In this document: in pieces, positions 4,207 through 20,100 of the stretch | How positions within the stretch are numbered: the first letter of the stretch is position 1 | Layout: every line of letters starts with the position of its first letter | From: Zygophlyctis sp. KS116 | Lineage: Eukaryota; Fungi; Chytridiomycota | NCBI GenBank assembly: GCA_054661495.1 | Contig: BAAFSQ010000178.1 | Span: 1 to 20,428 of the forward strand | Length of the DNA: 20,428 bases | Direction of reading: 5' to 3' | Made by a program: the position numbers and the translations under genes | Notes under the pieces: generated by a model | What the model was told of the DNA's origin: nothing | Database searches by the model: none | The model's input: the letters and a program-made list of their open reading frames with translations, nothing else

Positions 4207-6511
4207 ATGATTTATTTCATCATTCTGTTGGTTTTAGCTCTTGTTAATTCAAGACACTTTACTCCTATTGTAATTTCTAATGCATCCATATGATAGGATT
4301 TAGTTTCTTTGAAGAGACTCGGACAAGTTTCGCCGCATCCAGCAGGCTTGGGCGCACTCCTAACTTATTCAATTTATGATTCTAGTTCTAATACTGATAC
4401 GCAATGGCTTGCATGGGTTTCGTTTAATGAGGAAAAGTTTTTGCAATTGACATCTAGAGTGCATGGTGTATTTTGGTTTTCAGAAAACGTTATTGGATAT
4501 GTCAAAAGTGTCAATGGAACGCATCAGGTATTTTTATTATAATTGGATTAAATTAGATTTTTTATTCTTCATTTGACCCGGAATCAAAGGATATTAGAGA
4601 TTTAGATGATTATCAACTGACAAGTTTCCCATCTTCAGTGGGAAATGTGAAATTTCACCAAAAATCAAACTTGCTTACATTTGTTGCATCTGTGTATTCA
4701 GATGGGGAAATTGAAAATTCAGGAGAAAAGGCTGGATTTGCTTCTGGAGTAGTTTACGGTAAAAGACTTTTATTTGAAATTCTAGATAATCTTTTTGTCC
4801 GACATTGGGATGCTTATGTAAATCCACAAAAGTTTAGTCAATTATTCACTTTAAAACTAAAACTTTCCGATAAAAGGATCTCTATAGTTGGAAAGCCTAT
4901 AAACTTACTCATGGGAACTAAATTAGAAACTCCCGTTGCTCCCGACGGTGGGGATGATGATTATGATATTTCTCCAGATGGTAAATGCGTAAAAACCAAT
5001 GTTAGGACAGCGAATTGCTTTCGTGAGTAGAGTTCCGAATTCTAATATGGCTTGGAATACAAATACGGATATATATCTTGTCCCTGCTGATGGATCAGAA
5101 CCGCCATCTTCAATTTCTTCTTATAATAAGGGTTACGATAAACATCCAAAGTTTTCTCTTGATGGATCTTGGATCGCATGGTTGCAAATGCCTACTCCTG
5201 GCTACGAAGCAGATTCTAATAGAATAGCTCTATATTCTGTGGAGCCTACTTCAGATTCATACAGGAAAATTCTTGTAAAAGATTGGGATCGCTCCCCAGA
5301 GTCTATAACTTGGACTGAGAATGGTTTGATAATATCTGCACAGGAAATAGGACGTGTAAAGTTGTTCAAAGTTAGCTTTGAAGGAATTGTTGAACCATGG
5401 ATTTCTGACGGTCAAAATAGTCAATTGACATATGTTAGAAACTACGGCTTTGTTTTTGTGAAGAGCACTTTAACTTCTTCTCCAGACATTTTTGTCAGTC
5501 GAAATGGGGAAGTAAAGCAAGTAACTCACCTGAATTTGGAATACATGAAAGATGTTGAACTGTCAACTCCAGAGGTAATTTACAATTTCTGAATATTAGG
5601 AAATATGGTTTGAAGGTGCTAAAGGCCGTATGGTGCATGGATGGTTTTTTAAACCGCACAATTTTGATGCCAAAAAGACCTACCCTTTAGCATTTTTGAT
5701 ACATGGTGGACCTGAAGGGGCCTGGAACGATGATTGGGGCTTAAGATGGAATCAACAGATATTTTCTGGTGCTGGATATGCTGTTGTTTCTATCAATCCA
5801 ACTGGATCAACTGGCTACGGATCAGAATTCACCAGAGCCATTTTAGGAAATTGGGGATCTCTTCCATACTTTGGTATAAAAGTTTCAATCAGTTTAATTT
5901 TTAGACTTGATGAAAGGACTTGATTTTGTTGTGAATGAATATCAATTTATTGACCAGTCACGCATAGCAGGATTGGGAGCTTCGTATGGAGGTTATATGG
6001 TGAATTGGATTAATGGGCATACAGATCGTTTTGCATGTCTAGGTAATGGTACAATAATTAAGTAATAGTAACCCACGATGGAATATTTGACACTACTTCG
6101 TCTTATTACAATACTGATGAGCTCTGGTTCCCAGAAGCAGAGGTAATTCTTATTAAATTCATGTTAGTTTGGAGGAGTTCCATTCAATAAAGAGACTCGT
6201 AAACTTTATGAAAAGTATTCACCAATGAATTATGTACAAAATTGGAAAACTCCTACCCTTGTGATTCATGGGGAATTAGATTACAGACTTCCAATCACAG
6301 AAGGTAAATCAAGTTACTTATATTTCTAGGATTATCTGTATTTACAGCTCTCCAACGTCAAAATATTCCTAGTAAATTACTTTACTTCCCAGATGAAAAC
6401 CATTGGGTTCGAAAACATGCCAATTCAATCCTCTGGAATACGCAAGTTTTATCTTGGCTTGATCAGTGGACTTTAACTCAGAAAGACTCCTTGATAGTCC
6501 AAATCTATTAA
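4207..6511 (+). CDS. DPP5: Secreted S9-family peptidase, fungal dipeptidyl-peptidase V (DPP5/DppV)-like, 687 aa, 9 introns (4270-4296, 4528-4556, 4759-4785, 4981-5005, 5575-5599, 5874-5904, 6043-6068, 6143-6167, 6304-6329)
   Basis: Signal peptide MIYFIILLVLALVNS; LFVRHWD; TolB-like propeller repeats (SPDG); IHGGPEG; NPTGSTGYG; nucleophile motif GASYGG; Asp motif GELDYR; His motif FPDENH. All splices restore the frame. Confidence 0.9.
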
Positions 6512-7239
6512 TCACACATTTTGTCTAAAACTGATTCTAAATCTGCTTCTTTTTGAGCCTCTACTTGAATTTGTGAAACCTTTTTCCTAGAGACTCCATG
6601 ATTAACATCATTTACAACTCTTAAAATTTCTTCTTGTCCCATATTTCCATTAGCAATTGTCCCATTTAAAGAATCTGCAAGAGCTTCTTTTCTCTTTGAA
6701 ATCATGTTTGACAAGTGCAAATCACTTCCCTTCATTTTAGAACTAATCATTTCAGGGATTGACATATTATTTAAATCCGACATGAGAGATTTTCTACTTG
6801 TAACATCCTCCAACTTTTCTTCCATGTTTGCATAAGTTACAAAATCCTTTGACTCATAATATAAATGCAATAGGGACTGTGTCCTTAATTCCTGTGCTTT
6901 CTGAGCAGATTCCAAAGCTCTAGAGAAGCGATTTAAATTTCTAGCAGCATAATAATCTTTTAATTCATCCATAGTCATATTAAACACTGGATGAATTTTC
7001 TTTCCCTTGTCCTTCTTCTTCTTTGGAAAGACTGTCAATAGAGAATCCTCTTGAACTTTTTTGTATTCTTGAATATCGTAAATTCTTGCATGCTGAACCT
7101 CCAGTCTCTGTTTAGACTCTGAGAGCCTAGCCACCTTTTCCTTTAATTTCACTTCACAAGTTTCCTGGGCATATTGTTTTCTGATTGCTCTCATTTGAGC
7201 TCTATAAACGATCCATGGATCAATTGGATTTGCCTTCAT
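6508..7239 (-). CDS. Probable mitochondrial small-subunit ribosomal protein mS26 (PET12/MRPS26-like), 243 aa
   Basis: Long charged helical protein with W..YRAQMRAIRKQY near the N-terminus and R..SLLHLY..SKDFVT..NMEEKLE, which resembles the mS26 signature as I recall it. Not verified by search. Confidence 0.55.
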   Translation of the reverse strand: MKANPIDPWIVYRAQMRAIRKQYAQETCEVKLKEKVARLSESKQRLEVQHARIYDIQEYKKVQEDSLLTVFPKKKKDKGKKIHPVFNMTMDELKDYYAARNLNRFSRALESAQKAQELRTQSLLHLYYESKDFVTYANMEEKLEDVTSRKSLMSDLNNMSIPEMISSKMKGSDLHLSNMISKRKEALADSLNGTIANGNMGQEEILRVVNDVNHGVSRKKVSQIQVEAQKEADLESVLDKMCD

Positions 7240-7309: not shown

Positions 7310-8250
7310 ATGAGAAATTCTCTTCGAATTTTGGTATTTTAGAGATATTAACGTTTTAGGGCAGATTTTCTCATACTTTAAATGTACCTTATAATCATGT
7401 CCCAGTGACTGAATTTGAGAGAGGAATTCCTAAAACACAGGTTAGGGATTTGAGTGTTGAAGAGTCTAAATGGGAATTTTGGACAGTTTCTCAGTGTCAG
7501 TTTGATCAGAAACCTGCGCCTTGGTGGGTTGCGTCTGTTCCAAAAGATGAAACTTGGATTGTAGAGAGATTTGGAAAACCCAAAGAAATGGGTCCAGGGT
7601 TTCATTTGTTTATTCCAAAAATTGACAAGGTAAAGGCTGTAAAGTCTAGTATTCCAATTACTTGTGGATTAGTTACTAGAGGAGTAGGAGACAAGGGAGA
7701 TTTAGATGTGTATTTGGTTAATCATTTTCAAATTACTGATTATGCAAAATCTGCCTACTATTCTCATCCAACAATTAAAAAGGGTGATTCTGAAAGAGCA
7801 GTTCTCAGATTGACTCAAAATATAGTACATGATTTTTTCAAGGGAAAAACAGAAATTACTTCTGCTGATGCTTCAAAATTAAGGGAAAAAATTGTTTTAC
7901 AACTTTCTGATGCCTCTGATGAATTGGGATTAAAGATTATTGATGTAGAGTTTAGAGGTGCTTTTTCTGCAACTGAGCGCGTTCCTGATAAGTTGCGTGC
8001 TTTGGCTGCTCCTGATAAGGATCCTTCTGTTCCTGGACATGGATTAGCAAATGATTATTGGGCTGAAGAACTAACACCTCCATTTTTTGAAAAGAAAAAG
8101 TATGGATCAGATTATGAACCAGTAACTCCTGCATCAGTATCACTGGAATGGTCTATTCCTTCACCACCTGATTTCCATCACTTTAACATGATTCCTAAAA
8201 TGATTGCCCCACAGCCTGTTGAAGGAAAAGTTTCAAAAACCTCTCATTAA
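7310..8250 (+). CDS. SPFH/Band-7 (stomatin-like protein 2-like) protein with a C-terminal Cox1-C-terminus-like segment, 304 aa; intron 7334-7359
   Basis: The spliced N-terminus MRNSLRILGRFSHTL looks like a mitochondrial presequence (Arg/Ser/Leu-rich, no acidic residues). The SPFH start VPKDETWIVERFGK...GPGFHLFIPKIDKV and end LGLKIIDVEFR are present. The tail is DYWAEELTPPFF...SLEWSIPSPPDFHHFNMIP. Confidence 0.8.
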
Positions 8251-13620: not shown

Positions 13621-13648
13621 TTCAGAATCTTAGGCTTTGGTCAAACTC

Positions 13649-16600
13649 ATGTCTTTACCTGCCGATCGCATCTTTCCCATCCGATCAGTTTTACAGGGAT
13701 CATATGTGCCAGTATCCAATGAAGATGATGCAAACACTGCACAAGAAGAACTTCTTGTTTGGTCAAACGGTAGATTTGTTAATTGTGATGAGGAGCCAAT
13801 ACATATCCCTGGTTCTATTCAGAGTTATGGTGCATTAGTAGCAATTGATGAGGAATCTTGGATAGTCAGGCAAGTTTCTGAAAACTCTGCTGATGTCATT
13901 GGAATTACGCCAAATCAACTCTTGAAGAGCCAATCGCTAAAAGAGTTTCTGACCAAAGACTCTATTTTGGCATTGGAAAATAATATAAAGTCTCTAAGTC
14001 ATTTTCCACAAGATTCAGGGCCTGATATATTTATGATTCAATTTACTAATAATTATGGCCAAAATGACTTAAATTGTGCGCTACATAGATTCAAGGAAAA
14101 TTCAGGGATGTTGATTTTAGAGTTTGAAATGGTAGAGGAAGAGAGGCCACAATATGTATACTCTGATCATGATAATGATGATCTTGATCAAGAAGATAAA
14201 CAAAGGTATGATCAGTTGCGACTGGCTTTTGATAATTTTATTCGACAAGATGGGTTTGTAAGTTTTATTTTAGCTAATTTTAGAGGTCTCAAATGCCAGT
14301 TTTACAAATAATGGATAAATTAGAATCGTATTTAGCAACTAAAGATACAATTCAAAAACTTTCAGAGGCTGTAGTTAAAGTAATAAGGCAAATAATTGTA
14401 TTTGATCGTGTTGTCGTGTATCAATTTGATGATGAATGGAATGGGGAATGTATAGCAGAGAGTTTAAATCCCTTTTATAAAGATTTACAATCTCTTTTAG
14501 GTTTACATTTTCCTGCTGGCGATATACCAGCTCAGGCTAGACATTTGTATACTCAAAATAAGGTAAGTTTGGCCTAAATAATTCAAGATTCGATATTTGT
14601 ATTCTAGACAAGCTGTAAATTCAAGAATTTTATGTAGATCTTCAACAGATTTGGCAAAGCCTTTGGATTTGTCTTTTTCAGTTCTACGATCAATGTCACC
14701 TATCCATTTGGTATGTATTAGAAATTTAATTAATAGCAATATCTTTCAAATATGTGTGTTGAATCGTCTCTTTCTATTTCTATTTTATCAAATGGGAAAT
14801 TGTGGGGTCTTATTTGCTGCCATAGTGTGGCTCCTCTGAAAATTTCAATCTATACAAGAAAGTTTCTGACTGTTTTTAGTAAATTTTTATCGAAGGCAAT
14901 AGAGAGTCTCAACTTGAAAAAAAGGCTCAATTCTAGAAGCTTGATTACTGCTAAAGCTTCAAGTAATATTTCAGGATCTAATCTAGAAAATACTTCATAC
15001 TTGGCGTCAAACTCTGAAGACTTACTGCAGCTTTTGGCTTCTGGTGCGTTTAAAATTGTTAAAACAGATAGACTATGCCGTGATTTCAATTGACACAGAG
15101 GCTAAACTGATTGGTAATATTGATAACTCAGCGACGATAATCGGATTAGTTGATTTTTTACGAATGAAGGATCTCAAGGAAATATATGGCACTGAATGTT
15201 TATCCGAAGATATGCCTGATTTTACATTCTCGTCGCCTGATATTGCCGGTATATTATTCATCCCCCTATCCAAAAGTGGGAGTGATTTCATGGTATTCAT
15301 TAGGCGTGAACAAGTGGTAGACGTCCATTGGGCGGGAAAGTTTGATATTTCTAAAGATGAAACGCTTATGCCTCGGTCATCCTTTGCAAAATGGACTCAA
15401 AAAGTTAAAAAGCGTTCCAAGAATTGGACAGAAGAAGAAAAAGAAGTCGCGCTGGTTTTACAGCTCGTATATTGGAGATATATAGATATTTGGAGGCAGA
15501 GGGATGCTGCAGTCAAGAGCAATAAGCTGAAGAATCTTCTTTTGGCAAATGTTTCGCATGAAGGTAAATTGCACTGAATGTAATTATAGTTCGCACCCCA
15601 CTTAACGCCATCATCAATTATCTTGAAATAGCATTAGACTCAGAATTAGGTGAAACTGGTAGAGAAGCAGTTTCTATCGCCTTAGGTTCAAGTAAATCGT
15701 TGATATTTATCATAAATGATTTATTGGTATATGCCCAATTTTAATATTTAGGATTTAACTAGAATTGAAGCTGGGAAAATGTTATTTAGGGAAGAACCAT
15801 TCAATATCTCAAAAACTATTCGTGAAGCTGTGGAAATGTTTAGAGCGGATGCTGCCACAAAGAATCTCGATTTTAGCCTTGAAATAAGTGACGAAATGCC
15901 TAAAACCCTAATTGGAGACGCAAGCAAACTCAGGCAGGTATGTGTTTGTTCTCTTGATAATTCTTAGATTATTTTGAACTTGTGCTGCAATTCTTTAAAG
16001 TTTACCACCAGCGGGTTTGTCAAAGTTATTTGCAAAATAGAGGAAACCACTAAAGATATCGTTCGAGTTAATCTTCAAGTACTAGATACTGGGTACATTT
16101 TTCTTCCAATAATTGGATAGTATCGGTATTCCGCAGGATAAATTATCAGTTATATTTGAGGATTTTGAACAAGTTGAAAGTCCATTAAGTAAAACTATTA
16201 AAGGATCAGGCAAGCACTGTTCAATTTAATTGATAGGCCTTGGATTAGCTATAGTGGCACGTATTGTTCAAAATATGAATGGTCAACTGCATGTAGAAAG
16301 TGATCCAAATAAACTGACCAAGTTTTCCCTTGTATTATCATACAAAAGAAATATCCCAGAACTTTTTCAGAATTTACAAATTCAAAATTATCTTAAACGC
16401 AAAAATAGTGACGGTGGAACCAAAATGGATACTGCCCTTGAACCTCTTGCGGCCCAGAATAAAATCTATGAAAAATTAAGAATATTATATGCTGAAGTAT
16501 TTTTAATAATATTACTAATAAAAAAGGATGATTTAGTTAATCAAGCGATACTTAACAAGCGCCTAACGAAATTGGGATATGAAGTTACTTGTTGTGAAAA

Positions 16601-17015
16601 TGGAGTTGAATGTATCACACTATTCGCTAAAGATCATTCTGCTTTTGACATTATACTAATGGATGTTCAGATGCCACTCTGTAATGGGTTAGAAGCGACA
16701 AAAAGAATCCGGGAAATTGAAAACTCGACTGAAATTGGCGAGCTTCCACTCTCTCACATTTTGAATCGGTATAGGATCCCTATTTTAGCGACTTCTGCAT
16801 CTGTGTATGAGTCTGATGTAGTGAATTGCATTCAAGCGGGAATGGACGGATTCGTGAACAAACCCATAGATGTCTCTGTTTTGGATAGATTACTAAAATC
16901 TGCACTAGACCAGAAAGAAAAAGACAGATATCTTATGTCCGAAGTTGGTGTACGTCAAGATTTAGCATGGTTTGATGATCGAAAATTTCGTTCCGTGAGA
17001 TCTAAAACCTCATAG
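13649..17015 (+). CDS. Fungal-type phytochrome 1 (PAS-GAF-PHY-HisKA-HATPase-REC hybrid kinase), 1031 aa; introns 14258-14283, 14563-14587, 14711-14736, 15044-15071, 15564-15589, 15727-15751, 15938-15967, 16093-16120, 16210-16236 (GC-AG), 16497-16526
   Basis: Bilin-attachment Cys46 in NCDEEPIHIPGSIQ; HFPAGDIP (DIP motif); SPIHLQYL; LWGLICCH; tongue motif PRSSF; H-box ANVSHEVRTPLNAI; N-box NSLKFT; G1 DTGIGI; G2 GSGLGL; receiver ILYAEDD, LMDVQMP and KP. Confidence 0.95.
13673..14004 (+). repeat. 332-nt block identical to 17147-17478 (5' part of both phytochrome genes)
   Basis: Compared base by base by eye at offset 3474. No mismatch was seen inside the block, and the sequences diverge strongly after ~14030/17500. 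Confidence 0.9.
16556..16789 (+). repeat. Near-identical block shared with 20195-20428 (receiver domains of the two phytochromes)
   Basis: About 5 mismatches in 234 nt by manual comparison (offset 3639). Confidence 0.85.
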
Positions 17016-17122: not shown

Positions 17123-20100
17123 ATGTCTTTACCTGCCGATCGTATATTTCCCATCCGATCAGTTTTACAGGGATCATATGTGCCAGTATCCAATGAAGAT
17201 GATGCAAACACTGCACAAGAAGAACTTCTTGTTTGGTCAAACGGTAGATTTGTTAATTGTGATGAGGAGCCAATACATATCCCTGGTTCTATTCAGAGTT
17301 ATGGTGCATTAGTAGCAATTGATGAGGAATCTTGGATAGTCAGGCAAGTTTCTGAAAACTCTGCTGATGTCATTGGAATTACGCCAAATCAACTCTTGAA
17401 GAGCCAATCGCTAAAAGAGTTTCTGACCAAAGACTCTATTTTGGCATTGGAAAATAATATAAAGTCTCTAAGTCATTTCCCAGAAGATTCAGGGCCTGAT
17501 ATTTTTAGAATTTTTATGTTGAATGATAAAGATTCTGCCCCTCTTTACTGTGCTCTTCACCGCAATGAAGAGAATGAAAAATTACTCGTCTTGGAATTTG
17601 TGCGGGAAGATAATACTGGATTACAACCGATTTATGCTCCTTCTAAAATAGATTTGAAAGAAGATTTACATCCAAAAGCAAAGCGAAGACATGATGAGCT
17701 AAGTGCTGCACTGGATAAGTTTACGTCTGAACATAATTTTGTAAGAATATTTGTACTAAATAAAGGACTCCATGATGACTGCTTTTCACATTATGGATAA
17801 AATGGAATCTTATCTGAGCACGAAAACTAATATACAATCTCTCTCAGAAGAAGTAGCACGGGTTGTGCGTCAAATTATTGTGTTTGATCGTGTGGTAGTG
17901 TATCAATTTGACGAGGAATGGAATGGTGAATGTATAGCAGAGAGTTTGAATCCATTGATAGAAGATCTTCAGCCATTTTATGGTTTGCATTTTCCTGCAA
18001 GTGATATTCCACCACAAGCGAGAAAGCTATATGCTAGAAATAAGGTATTTCATATCTTCTTAAGAAATAGATACGCTTCTTGTATTCTAGGCAACAGAAA
18101 ACGTCAAGATTGTTATGTCGCTCGCCTAGTGATTTAAAGCACCCGCTGGATTTATCATTTTCCGTTTTGCGATCCATGTCACCTATTCACTTGGTAATTA
18201 TTAATTTATTATTTATTAACATTACAGAAATATCTCAGCAATATGTCAGTAGAATCATCTCTTTCGATTTCTTTAATGTCTGGAGGAAAACTGTGGGGTC
18301 TCATAGCTTGCCATAATAACTCACCCACAAAAGTGTCATTGTTTATTCAGAGGTTTTGTGCAATGATGAGTAAATTTGTATCAAAACTTGTAGAAGGATT
18401 GAGCTACGAGAAAAGGATTTTTAGTCGCTCGTTTATAACTGAAAAGGCGACTGATAGCATTTCAGTTGGTAAACATGTGAATGGTTATATAGTCGCCAAG
18501 TCTGAAGATCTTTTGAAATTGTTTAAATCTGGTAATTCATCCTGAACTGACATTTTTAAGATTATGCGGTAATTTCTATTGATACAGAGGCAAAAATTAT
18601 GGGAGAATGTAATGAATCCAACATTTTAGTTGCTTTTGTTGATTTCCTTCGCTTAAAACAGCTCAAAGATGTTACCTCTTCTGACTTCATATCTAATTTT
18701 TTTCCCGAATTCCCGTATCAGTCAAATGGGATAGCAGGATTTTTATGTATCCCTCTCTCGAAAAATGGACAAGATTTTATTTGCTTTATCAGAAGAGAGC
18801 AAGTGAAGGTATGTTTTTATTGTCTCAAATCTAGAATGTATATTGGGGCGGAAATCCTAACAAATCAGATGATCCAAAAGATAAATTAGTTCCTCGTGCA
18901 TCTTTTTCTAAATGGATTCAGGTTGTCCAAAAGCGCTCAATTGTTTGGACAAGGGATGACCTTGAAGTTGCTGCTATCGTTCAATTAGTTTATTGGAGAT
19001 ACATAGATATTTGGAGGCAGAGGGATGCTGCAGTCAAGAGCAATAAGCTGAAGAATCTTTTGCTTGCAAACGTCTCGCACGAAGGTAGATTACACTGATG
19101 TTATTATAGTTCGCACCCCACTTAACGCCATAATCAATTATCTTGAAATAGCATTAGAATCAGATTTGAATGAATCTGCTAGAGAGGCGATAAGTGTGGC
19201 TTTAGGATCAAGTAAATCGTTGATCTTTATCATCAATGATCTATTGGTATATGCCCAATTTTCATATTTAGGATTTAACTAGAATTGAAGCTGGGAAAAT
19301 GCTATTCAGGGAAGAGCCATTTAATATTATCCAAACGATTAAGGAAGCTGTCGAAATGTTTAGAGCAGATGCTGCAAGAAAAAAAATTGATTTTGTTTTT
19401 CGAATAAGTGATGATTTACCGGAAACTGTGGTAGGAGATTGTACTAAACTGAGACAGGTATTTATTAATTTTGTTTAACCGAAAGATAATCTTAAACTTG
19501 TGTGGAAACTCTTTAAAATTCACTTCAGAAGGTTACGTAAAAGTATTCTGTAACGTTGAAGAGCTGACCAAGGAATATGTCAAAGTCAACATTATAGTGA
19601 TGGATTCGGGGTACTACGATTTAATTATTGATTTTATAGAATTGGGATCCCAAAGGAAAAGTTATCCGTTATTTTTGAAGATTTTGAACAGGTTGAAAGT
19701 TCTTTGAGCAAAAAAGTTCAAGGTGCAGGTGAGTGAATCAATGTTTAAAAGTACAGGCCTTGGATTAGCTATTGTAGCCCGTATCATCCATAATATGAAT
19801 GGGAAGCTCCAAGTTGAAAGCAATATTGATCAAGGAACTAAATTCTCCCTTCACTTAAAATTCCCATTGTTAATGCCAGATGGGACTCAAGATAAAACAC
19901 TATCAGAGGATCGTACTACTTTAGTAAGAAATAAGATAGAAGATGAATTAGACCTGGGTATAGCGCCTATAACTGTACTTGGCAATACGACTACGTATAT
20001 TTCTCCAATTGAAACTTTGCAGAAAGATACAGAGAACATGGAAATAAAGGAAGTACCAAATACACATAAAAGAGATGTAAGTACTGTAAAGCAGGCGGAA

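What the first reader, a model, noticed from the sequence alone, without database searches (positions are those of the whole stretch)
7310..8250. Nuclear SPFH-domain protein carrying the C-terminal tail of mitochondrial Cox1: a candidate split cox1 gene
Seen: an intron-containing gene encodes a presequence-like N-terminus and an SLP-2/stomatin-like SPFH domain. Where the usual SLP-2 coiled coil should follow, it instead has DYWAEELTPPFF...SVSLEWSIPSPPDFHHFNMIPKM (8053-8202). Established: the soluble C-terminus of cytochrome c oxidase subunit 1 has the pattern W...P.F...(S/T)LEW...SPPxxHxF (human NLEWLYGCPPPYHTF, plant TLEWMVQSPPAFHTF), including the His equivalent to bovine His503. Several protist lineages encode this piece in the nucleus as Cox1-c while their mtDNA Cox1 is truncated (described from Acanthamoeba by Gawryluk and Gray). 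Inference: a 3' fragment of cox1 moved to the nucleus and captured the targeting signal and SPFH domain of a stomatin-like gene copy. That would create a chimeric complex IV component that supplies the Cox1 tail in trans and may tether complex IV to SPFH scaffolds. I do not know of a described SPFH::Cox1-c fusion in fungi, but could not search.
Basis: partly seen in the sequence, partly recalled or inferred. Interest (0 to 1): 0.92.

Follow-up and report, generated by a model that had tools for sequence, protein, structure and literature searches.

The report
Chytrid split cox1 on stomatin-like carrier
In chytrid fungi the tail end of the core respiratory enzyme subunit Cox1 is missing from the mitochondrial gene and is instead encoded in the nucleus, fused to a stomatin-like protein; I found no earlier report of a split cox1 in fungi.

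Summary
Confirmed and widened. A nuclear gene (ATG 7310, 26-nt intron seen spliced in an RNA contig, exon 2 7360-8250) encodes a presequence-like start, an SPFH domain of the QmcA/SLP-2 type, and a C-terminal segment homologous to the matrix tail of cytochrome c oxidase subunit 1 (LEW..PSPPxxHxF; profile-profile 96.8%). The same assembly holds a mitochondrial contig (TAG=Leu) whose cox1 stops at 489 aa, shortly after the last helix, with no tail on the contig. The fusion occurs in 24 named chytrid genera and in the monoblepharids Gonapodya and Hyaloraphidium; its tree follows the chytrid orders. All seven named chytrid/monoblepharid Cox1 proteins retrieved lack the tail (four from species that also have the fusion); Conidiobolus-type fungi keep it. 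Best reading: one ancient split of cox1 in the chytrid-monoblepharid ancestor, with the tail supplied in trans as an SPFH-bearing complex IV subunit. Split cox1 is known in protists; a 2017 review says not in fungi. No paper found on this fusion, but the original 2010 paper was not available. Localisation, complex IV binding and scaffold tethering are untested; the SPFH coiled coil is gone. The scan had not noted this on other DNA.

The parts
7310..7333 (+). Exon 1, 8 codons from ATG; start of a short basic, acid-free presequence-like N-terminus
   Evidence: 37 of 38 full-length homologues have at least 2 R/K and at most 1 D/E before the conserved block
7334..7359 (+). 26-nt GT..AG intron
   Evidence: left out in RNA-library contig X1 record 1
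7360..8250 (+). Exon 2, 296 codons plus TAA; carries the N-block, SPFH domain and Cox1 tail in one frame
   Evidence: RNA contigs over most of it, 11 of 13 differences at third codon positions
7369..7494 (+). Lineage-specific conserved N-terminal block (G-P..R..E..W..W), function unknown, where the presequence would end (an R precedes the conserved SH in many members)
   Evidence: 56% mean column identity; no convincing PDB relative
7528..7968 (+). SPFH/Band 7 domain, QmcA/SLP-2 type; no transmembrane helix
   Evidence: Pfam PF01145; best PDB profile hit QmcA E 5.9e-13 against stomatin 6e-5; profile score 67-69 bits to two QmcA, 50 to a bacterial stomatin, 11 or less to own prohibitins; top Atlas shape match is a eukaryotic Band_7+Band_7_C cluster; max 19-residue hydropathy 0.85-1.25
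7969..8031 (+). Linker; keeps only the first short helix of the SPFH coiled coil (conserved K.RA)
   Evidence: AF2 helix 208-213, confidence falls after about residue 220; alignment
8032..8205 (+). Cox1 C-terminal tail homologue: DYW at 8053, P-x-F-F, LEW at 8143-8151, SPPDFHHF at 8161-8184; invariant His at 8176-8178 aligns with the Cox1 SPPxxH histidine
   Evidence: the most conserved part of the protein (62-67% column identity)

Best explanation
A split cox1. In the common ancestor of Chytridiomycota and Monoblepharidomycota the last ~35-45 codons of mitochondrial cox1 came to be encoded in the nucleus, fused in place of the coiled coil of an SLP-2-type SPFH gene, whose presequence gave import into the matrix. 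Mitochondrial cox1 then lost the tail. SHOWN: the fusion, its splicing and conservation, the homology of the tail, the truncation of mt Cox1 in the same assembly and in other species, and a gene tree consistent with vertical inheritance. INFERRED: the protein is imported, loses its presequence, and its tail docks on the matrix face of the 12-helix Cox1 in the place the covalent tail occupies in other oxidases, restoring the SPPxxH histidine near the proton-entry side and contacts with matrix subunits. The monomeric SPFH domain and N-block stay attached as a peripheral, membrane-facing accessory domain of complex IV.
For: Tail homology in both directions. The tail profile scores 14-35 bits on every tail-bearing Cox1 end retrieved and 2 bits or less on the truncated ones. 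Own mt Cox1 is 489 aa and ends in TAA with no tail in any frame of the 21.5-kb contig; the only tail match in the whole assembly is this gene. Species with both a truncated Cox1 and the fusion: Synchytrium microbalum, S. endobioticum, Spizellomyces 'palustris', Blyttiomyces helicus. Harpochytrium JEL94 and JEL105 Cox1 are 487 aa, and Gonapodya/Hyaloraphidium carry the fusion. In a Cox1 tree built without the tail, all 11 tail-bearing sequences lie on one side of a 98-support branch, away from 52 chytrid-like sequences none of which has the motif. The tail is the most conserved region. Precedent in protists: PMC5664110.
Against: No experiment: localisation, import, and binding to Cox1 are untested. 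AF2 leaves the tail disordered in isolation (pLDDT under 50), as expected but uninformative; a complex could not be modelled. The third proline of the SPPPxH consensus is replaced by an invariant Asp in Chytridiomycota. The B. helicus Cox1 end looks mis-annotated. The monoblepharid pairing is across genera. The mt contig may not be the whole mtDNA, and its assignment to the same organism rests on co-assembly and the TAG=Leu code.
Confidence: 0.7

Rival explanations
1. Split cox1, but the SPFH part is only a carrier: the precursor is cut after import and a free ~70-residue tail peptide joins complex IV while the SPFH half works separately or is degraded.
For: A conserved K.RA motif sits at the SPFH-tail junction; the tail shows no predicted contact with the SPFH domain; tandem mitochondrial precursors that are cleaved are known in fungi (own knowledge).
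Against: The K.RA stretch lies where the first helix of the SPFH coiled coil begins (helix 208-213), so its conservation has a structural explanation; the linker is as conserved as the domain (43% against 41%).
Confidence: 0.12
2. The relocated tail works mainly in assembly or regulation rather than as a permanent subunit: it binds Mss51/Cox14/Coa3-type factors or nascent Cox1 transiently, coupling nuclear supply to Cox1 synthesis.
For: [quoted passage not shown] An MSS51_C-family gene is present in this assembly. SPFH proteins are typically chaperone/scaffold proteins (own knowledge).
Against: The conserved residues are the ones shared with bacterial Cox1 tails, which have no Mss51; the mature enzyme would otherwise lack a segment kept from bacteria to mammals. 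PF20179 also covers proteins that are not true Mss51.
Confidence: 0.12
3. The tail is not a fresh transfer in chytrids but a descendant of the ancient nuclear cox1-c known in protists, kept in the fungal line and later fused to the SPFH gene. This concerns origin and is compatible with the best explanation's mechanism.
For: The review lists an early single transfer as one of two readings of the protist distribution (PMC5664110). The best-scoring distant hits of the core motif are bacterial-type and plant Cox1 tails, not fungal ones.
Against: The chytrid piece is longer than the ~25-aa protist piece and its upstream W..P.FF half resembles the insertion in fungal mt Cox1 tails (0/200 shuffles for three sequences, 3-8% for about a dozen, none for Conidiobolus-type). 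No recognisable protist Cox1-c subunit appeared in the PDB or representative searches, and no free-standing version was seen in other named fungi.
Confidence: 0.2
4. The resemblance is chance or convergence, or the fusion is an annotation artefact.
For: The single-sequence match to Cox1 is not significant alone (E about 0.5); the motif is short and proline-rich.
Against: Reciprocal profile matches, 23 of 23 PDB hits being Cox1/CyoB ends, one uninterrupted frame, and complementary loss in mtDNA.
Confidence: 0.02

Closest known systems
Cox1-c of protists (Acanthamoeba Cox1-c, Dictyostelium CoxIV; Gawryluk and Gray 2010, as summarised in PMC5664110)
   Same: Nuclear gene carries the Cox1 C-terminal SPPxxH motif; mt cox1 lacks it.
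   Different: Reported absent from fungi, plants and animals; about 25 aa there against a ~45-60 aa conserved segment here with a fungal-like W..P.FF half; here fused to an SPFH domain; third Pro replaced by Asp. Common ancestry with protist Cox1-c not shown.
Stomatin-like protein 2 (SLP-2/STOML2) and bacterial QmcA
   Same: SPFH domain closest to QmcA by profile; presequence-like N-terminus and no transmembrane helix; NCBI auto-names the Rhizophlyctis orthologue 'Stomatin-like protein 2, mitochondrial'.
   Different: Lacks the coiled coil and the Band_7_C domain (no PF16200 hit); has a lineage-specific N-block and the Cox1 tail.
Split cox2 (cox2a/cox2b) of chlorophycean algae and alveolates
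   Same: Piecewise transfer of a complex IV core subunit, hydrophilic part first (PMC5664110; bioRxiv 10.1101/2024.05.25.595893).
   Different: Different subunit and side of the membrane; no SPFH domain reported.

Membership tests
Cox1-c / split cox1 | Nuclear gene encodes a segment homologous to the Cox1 C-terminus with the SPPxxH histidine | tested here: met
   His invariant; window is a nuclear contig with introns, ATP-citrate lyase, cyclin
Cox1-c / split cox1 | mtDNA cox1 of the same organism lacks that segment | tested here: met
   489 aa, TAA, no motif on the contig; four other species pairs
Cox1-c / split cox1 | Exact consensus SPPPxH | tested here: not met
   SPPD(F/Y)H in Chytridiomycota, SPP(E/A)xH in monoblepharids; intact Cox1 tails also vary at this position
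Cox1-c / split cox1 | Product found in mitochondria and in complex IV | not testable with these tools
   presequence-like N-termini in 37 of 38 are suggestive only
Cox1-c / split cox1 | Orthology with protist cox1-c (same transfer event) | tested here: inconclusive
   no recognisable protist Cox1-c retrieved; upstream half leans fungal
SPFH / Band 7 superfamily | SPFH domain by profile and fold | tested here: met
SLP-2 / QmcA subfamily | SPFH domain closer to QmcA/SLP-2 than to stomatin, prohibitin, flotillin | tested here: met
   no eukaryotic SLP-2 sequence was in hand for a tree, so SLP-2 versus bacterial QmcA as donor is not resolved
SLP-2 / QmcA subfamily | C-terminal coiled coil and Band_7_C domain | tested here: not met
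   no PF16200 hit; the model has no long helix after residue 213

The most novel reading that the evidence does not exclude
An independent, fungal piecewise transfer of a respiratory core gene to the nucleus, shared by all aerobic chytrids and monoblepharids, that turned the mitochondrial SLP-2 scaffold protein into an obligatory complex IV subunit: an SPFH domain permanently built into a respiratory complex through a captured piece of Cox1.
Probability: 0.45. Interest if true: 0.9.

Novelty: new variant of a known kind. Interest (0 to 1): 0.84.

Why it matters
A 2017 review states that split cox1 has not been found in fungi, plants or animals (PMC5664110). This extends it to a whole early-diverging fungal clade and, if independent, shows the same tail moved to the nucleus more than once, which bears on the open question of one ancient versus many transfers. 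It explains why chytrid Cox1 is about 30-40 residues short, supplies a shared derived character for Chytridiomycota plus Monoblepharidomycota, and predicts an unrecognised complex IV subunit, now annotated as 'hypothetical' or 'Band 7 protein', in organisms that include Batrachochytrium and Synchytrium. It also separates the Cox1 tail from Cox1 naturally, which makes the tail's roles in proton entry and in assembly feedback testable.

Tried and rejected
Pfam on the tail alone: no family, because PF00115 ends before the tail. ESM Atlas feature search on the tail: only sub-0.9 hits. N-block against the PDB: a short match to gamma-carbonic-anhydrase-like proteins (E 0.01, 20 columns), taken as chance. 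Search for a canonical SLP-2 in the own assembly with PF16200 and with a QmcA protein: none; only a stomatin, two prohibitins, one other Band 7 gene and this gene; the first-look filter is loose. A last protein search meant to retrieve eukaryotic SLP-2 returned almost only the family itself. Ten literature searches found no description of the fusion; Gawryluk and Gray 2010 and Garcia-Villegas 2017 are not held. A frameshifted or intron-separated remainder of cox1 on the mt contig was looked for and not found. The careful Cox1 tree did not finish; the quick tree is cited.

Full report
Observation. The gene starts at ATG 7310, has an 8-codon first exon, a 26-nt GT..AG intron (7334-7359) and a 296-codon second exon ending in TAA at 8248-8250. 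A contig from a freshwater RNA library lacks exactly those 26 nt, and further RNA-library contigs lie over the SPFH region and the tail; 11 of the 13 differences from the window fall on third codon positions. These are contigs from four studies, at low depth, and none spans the whole gene. The window is nuclear: it also encodes ATP-citrate lyase, a cyclin, a GH16 enzyme and phytochrome-like proteins. Exon 2 has a Band 7 domain above the Pfam cut-off, and an AlphaFold model is confident over about residues 20-220 and matches stomatin, HflK/C and QmcA. All searches used exon 2 alone; the spliced protein was not joined.

The family. Exon 2 finds 46 relatives, and every named one is a chytrid. Later searches add Rhizophlyctis, Boothiomyces, and the monoblepharids Gonapodya and Hyaloraphidium: 24 named chytrid genera and 2 monoblepharid genera in all. 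No named member came from outside these two groups. All have the same layout: a basic, acid-free N-terminus (37 of 38), a conserved ~40-residue block, the SPFH domain, a short linker, and the tail. One predicted member (Zopfochytrium) changes frame within the tail in its annotation. No member tested has a transmembrane helix. The tail is the most conserved part, 62-67% column identity against 41% for the SPFH domain. The gene is single-copy in this assembly. Its tree separates monoblepharids with support 100 and largely groups members by chytrid order, as expected for one origin and vertical descent; the root was not tested. The window's organism is an unnamed freshwater chytrid with no close named relative in that tree.

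The tail is Cox1's. Alone, the tail gives four PDB hits, all Cox1 C-termini, but at E about 0.5. A 37-sequence profile gives 23 hits, all Cox1 or CyoB C-termini, best E 0.0022. Against 1.84 billion representatives it finds the family and then, at E 5e-5 to 8e-4, 21 fragments ending in a bacterial-type Cox1 tail, two of them confirmed by Pfam COX1; three long multi-stretch proteins among the hits were set aside unexamined. Profile against profile with intact fungal Cox1 tails gives 96.8% probability over 41 columns. A profile built only from intact non-chytrid tails finds this stretch in the window at E 9e-9. The invariant histidine (8176-8178) occupies the position of the SPPxxH histidine; that it is bovine His503 rests on my knowledge of the numbering, and His503 lies near the N-side surface by the D-pathway (PMC10194837).

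Mitochondrial cox1 is truncated. The assembly has a 21.5-kb mitochondrial contig with a tRNA of anticodon CUA and TAG read as Leu, the chytrid code. Its cox1 is 489 codons, has the complete Pfam COX1 domain and stops at TAA 54 residues after the GMPRR motif; intact fungal Cox1 has 89-98 residues there. No frame of the contig holds the motif. The contig ends in a 77-nt inverted repeat, so some mtDNA may lie elsewhere, but the tail profile finds only the nuclear gene in the whole assembly. Named Cox1 proteins of Synchytrium microbalum (496 aa), S. endobioticum (505), Spizellomyces 'palustris' and S. punctatus (496), Blyttiomyces helicus (500, end doubtful) and Harpochytrium JEL94 and JEL105 (487) all lack the tail; Conidiobolus, Neoconidiobolus and Capillidium keep it. 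The tail profile separates the two sets without overlap. In a tree built with the tail removed, the 11 tail-bearing sequences and one divergent tail-less sequence lie beyond a branch of support 98, and none of the 52 chytrid-like sequences on the other side has the motif (quick tree, sequences under 400 aa left out). These are related sequences, so this is one event, not many independent confirmations. About half of the truncated proteins keep a Trp in their last ten residues (56 of 103), near where the NPW of intact tails lies, so the break is close to that motif.

The carrier. The SPFH domain scores best against QmcA in the PDB (E 5.9e-13; stomatin 6e-5) and locally (67-69 bits; bacterial stomatin 50; own prohibitins 11 or less). 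The top Atlas shape match is a eukaryotic Band_7 plus Band_7_C cluster, at TM 0.45, and NCBI auto-names one orthologue SLP-2. An SLP-2 origin is therefore likely but not shown by a tree. The coiled coil and Band_7_C domain are absent. Without the coiled coil, cage formation is doubtful, which weakens the idea of tethering to SPFH scaffolds.

How it most likely works. Shown: a nuclear, spliced, conserved gene carries the Cox1 segment that the mitochondrial gene lacks. Inferred: it is imported into the matrix, and its tail binds the matrix face of Cox1 where the covalent tail lies in other oxidases, with the SPFH domain as an attached accessory domain (0.70). Rivals: cleavage to a free tail peptide (0.12); a transient assembly or regulatory role, given that yeast Mss51 binds the Cox1 tail (PMC5683760) and an MSS51_C-family gene is present (0.12); chance (0.02). 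On origin, the upstream W..P.FF half resembles fungal mt Cox1 tails modestly, which favours a fresh transfer in the chytrid ancestor over descent from protist cox1-c (about 0.8 to 0.2), but this test is weak and the core motif scores as well or better on bacterial-type tails.

Comparison and novelty. It works like protist Cox1-c and meets that system's two genetic criteria; orthology is open. [quoted passage not shown] Ten full-text searches found no report of the chytrid case or of an SPFH fusion, but the 2010 primary paper and most subscription journals could not be searched. It should not be filed as an SLP-2, since a defining part is missing. Verdict: real, clade-wide, a new variant of a known kind. 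Interest 0.84. Earlier scan notes gave only this same stretch.

Noticed in passing
G000:C172 (L008-L010), both ends: The mitochondrial contig begins and ends with the same 77 nt in inverted orientation, suggesting a collapsed inverted repeat (terminal repeats of a linear mtDNA or an internal IR); 77 may simply be the assembly k-mer.
   Followed up: partly
G000:C172:4486-5754 (-): A nad3-like C-terminal end sits on an open frame of about 420 codons, with roughly 290 residues of unknown sequence in front; identification by eye only.
   Followed up: no
G000:C172:5720-5804 and 14487-14571: An identical 85-nt stretch covers the 5' ends of the long nad3-like frame and of the atp6-like gene, possibly a duplicated promoter or translation start.
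   Followed up: partly
window 6508-7239 (-) and 8298 onward (+): Very tight packing: a divergent gene starts 70 nt upstream of the ATG and a leucine-rich-repeat gene starts 47 nt after the stop.
   Followed up: no
window 13637-14311 and 17123-17800 (+): Two neighbouring phytochrome-like genes (PAS_2 domains; kinase and receiver domains at 16230-17015).
   Followed up: no
P0019, P0028, P0042, P0225, P0234: A subgroup of environmental family members has LVW in place of the otherwise invariant LEW.
   Followed up: no
P0230, P0263: Gonapodya prolifera has two close copies of the fusion gene.
   Followed up: no
P0140: A divergent metagenomic Cox1 outside the chytrid group also lacks the tail, probably a protist with its own Cox1-c.
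   Followed up: no
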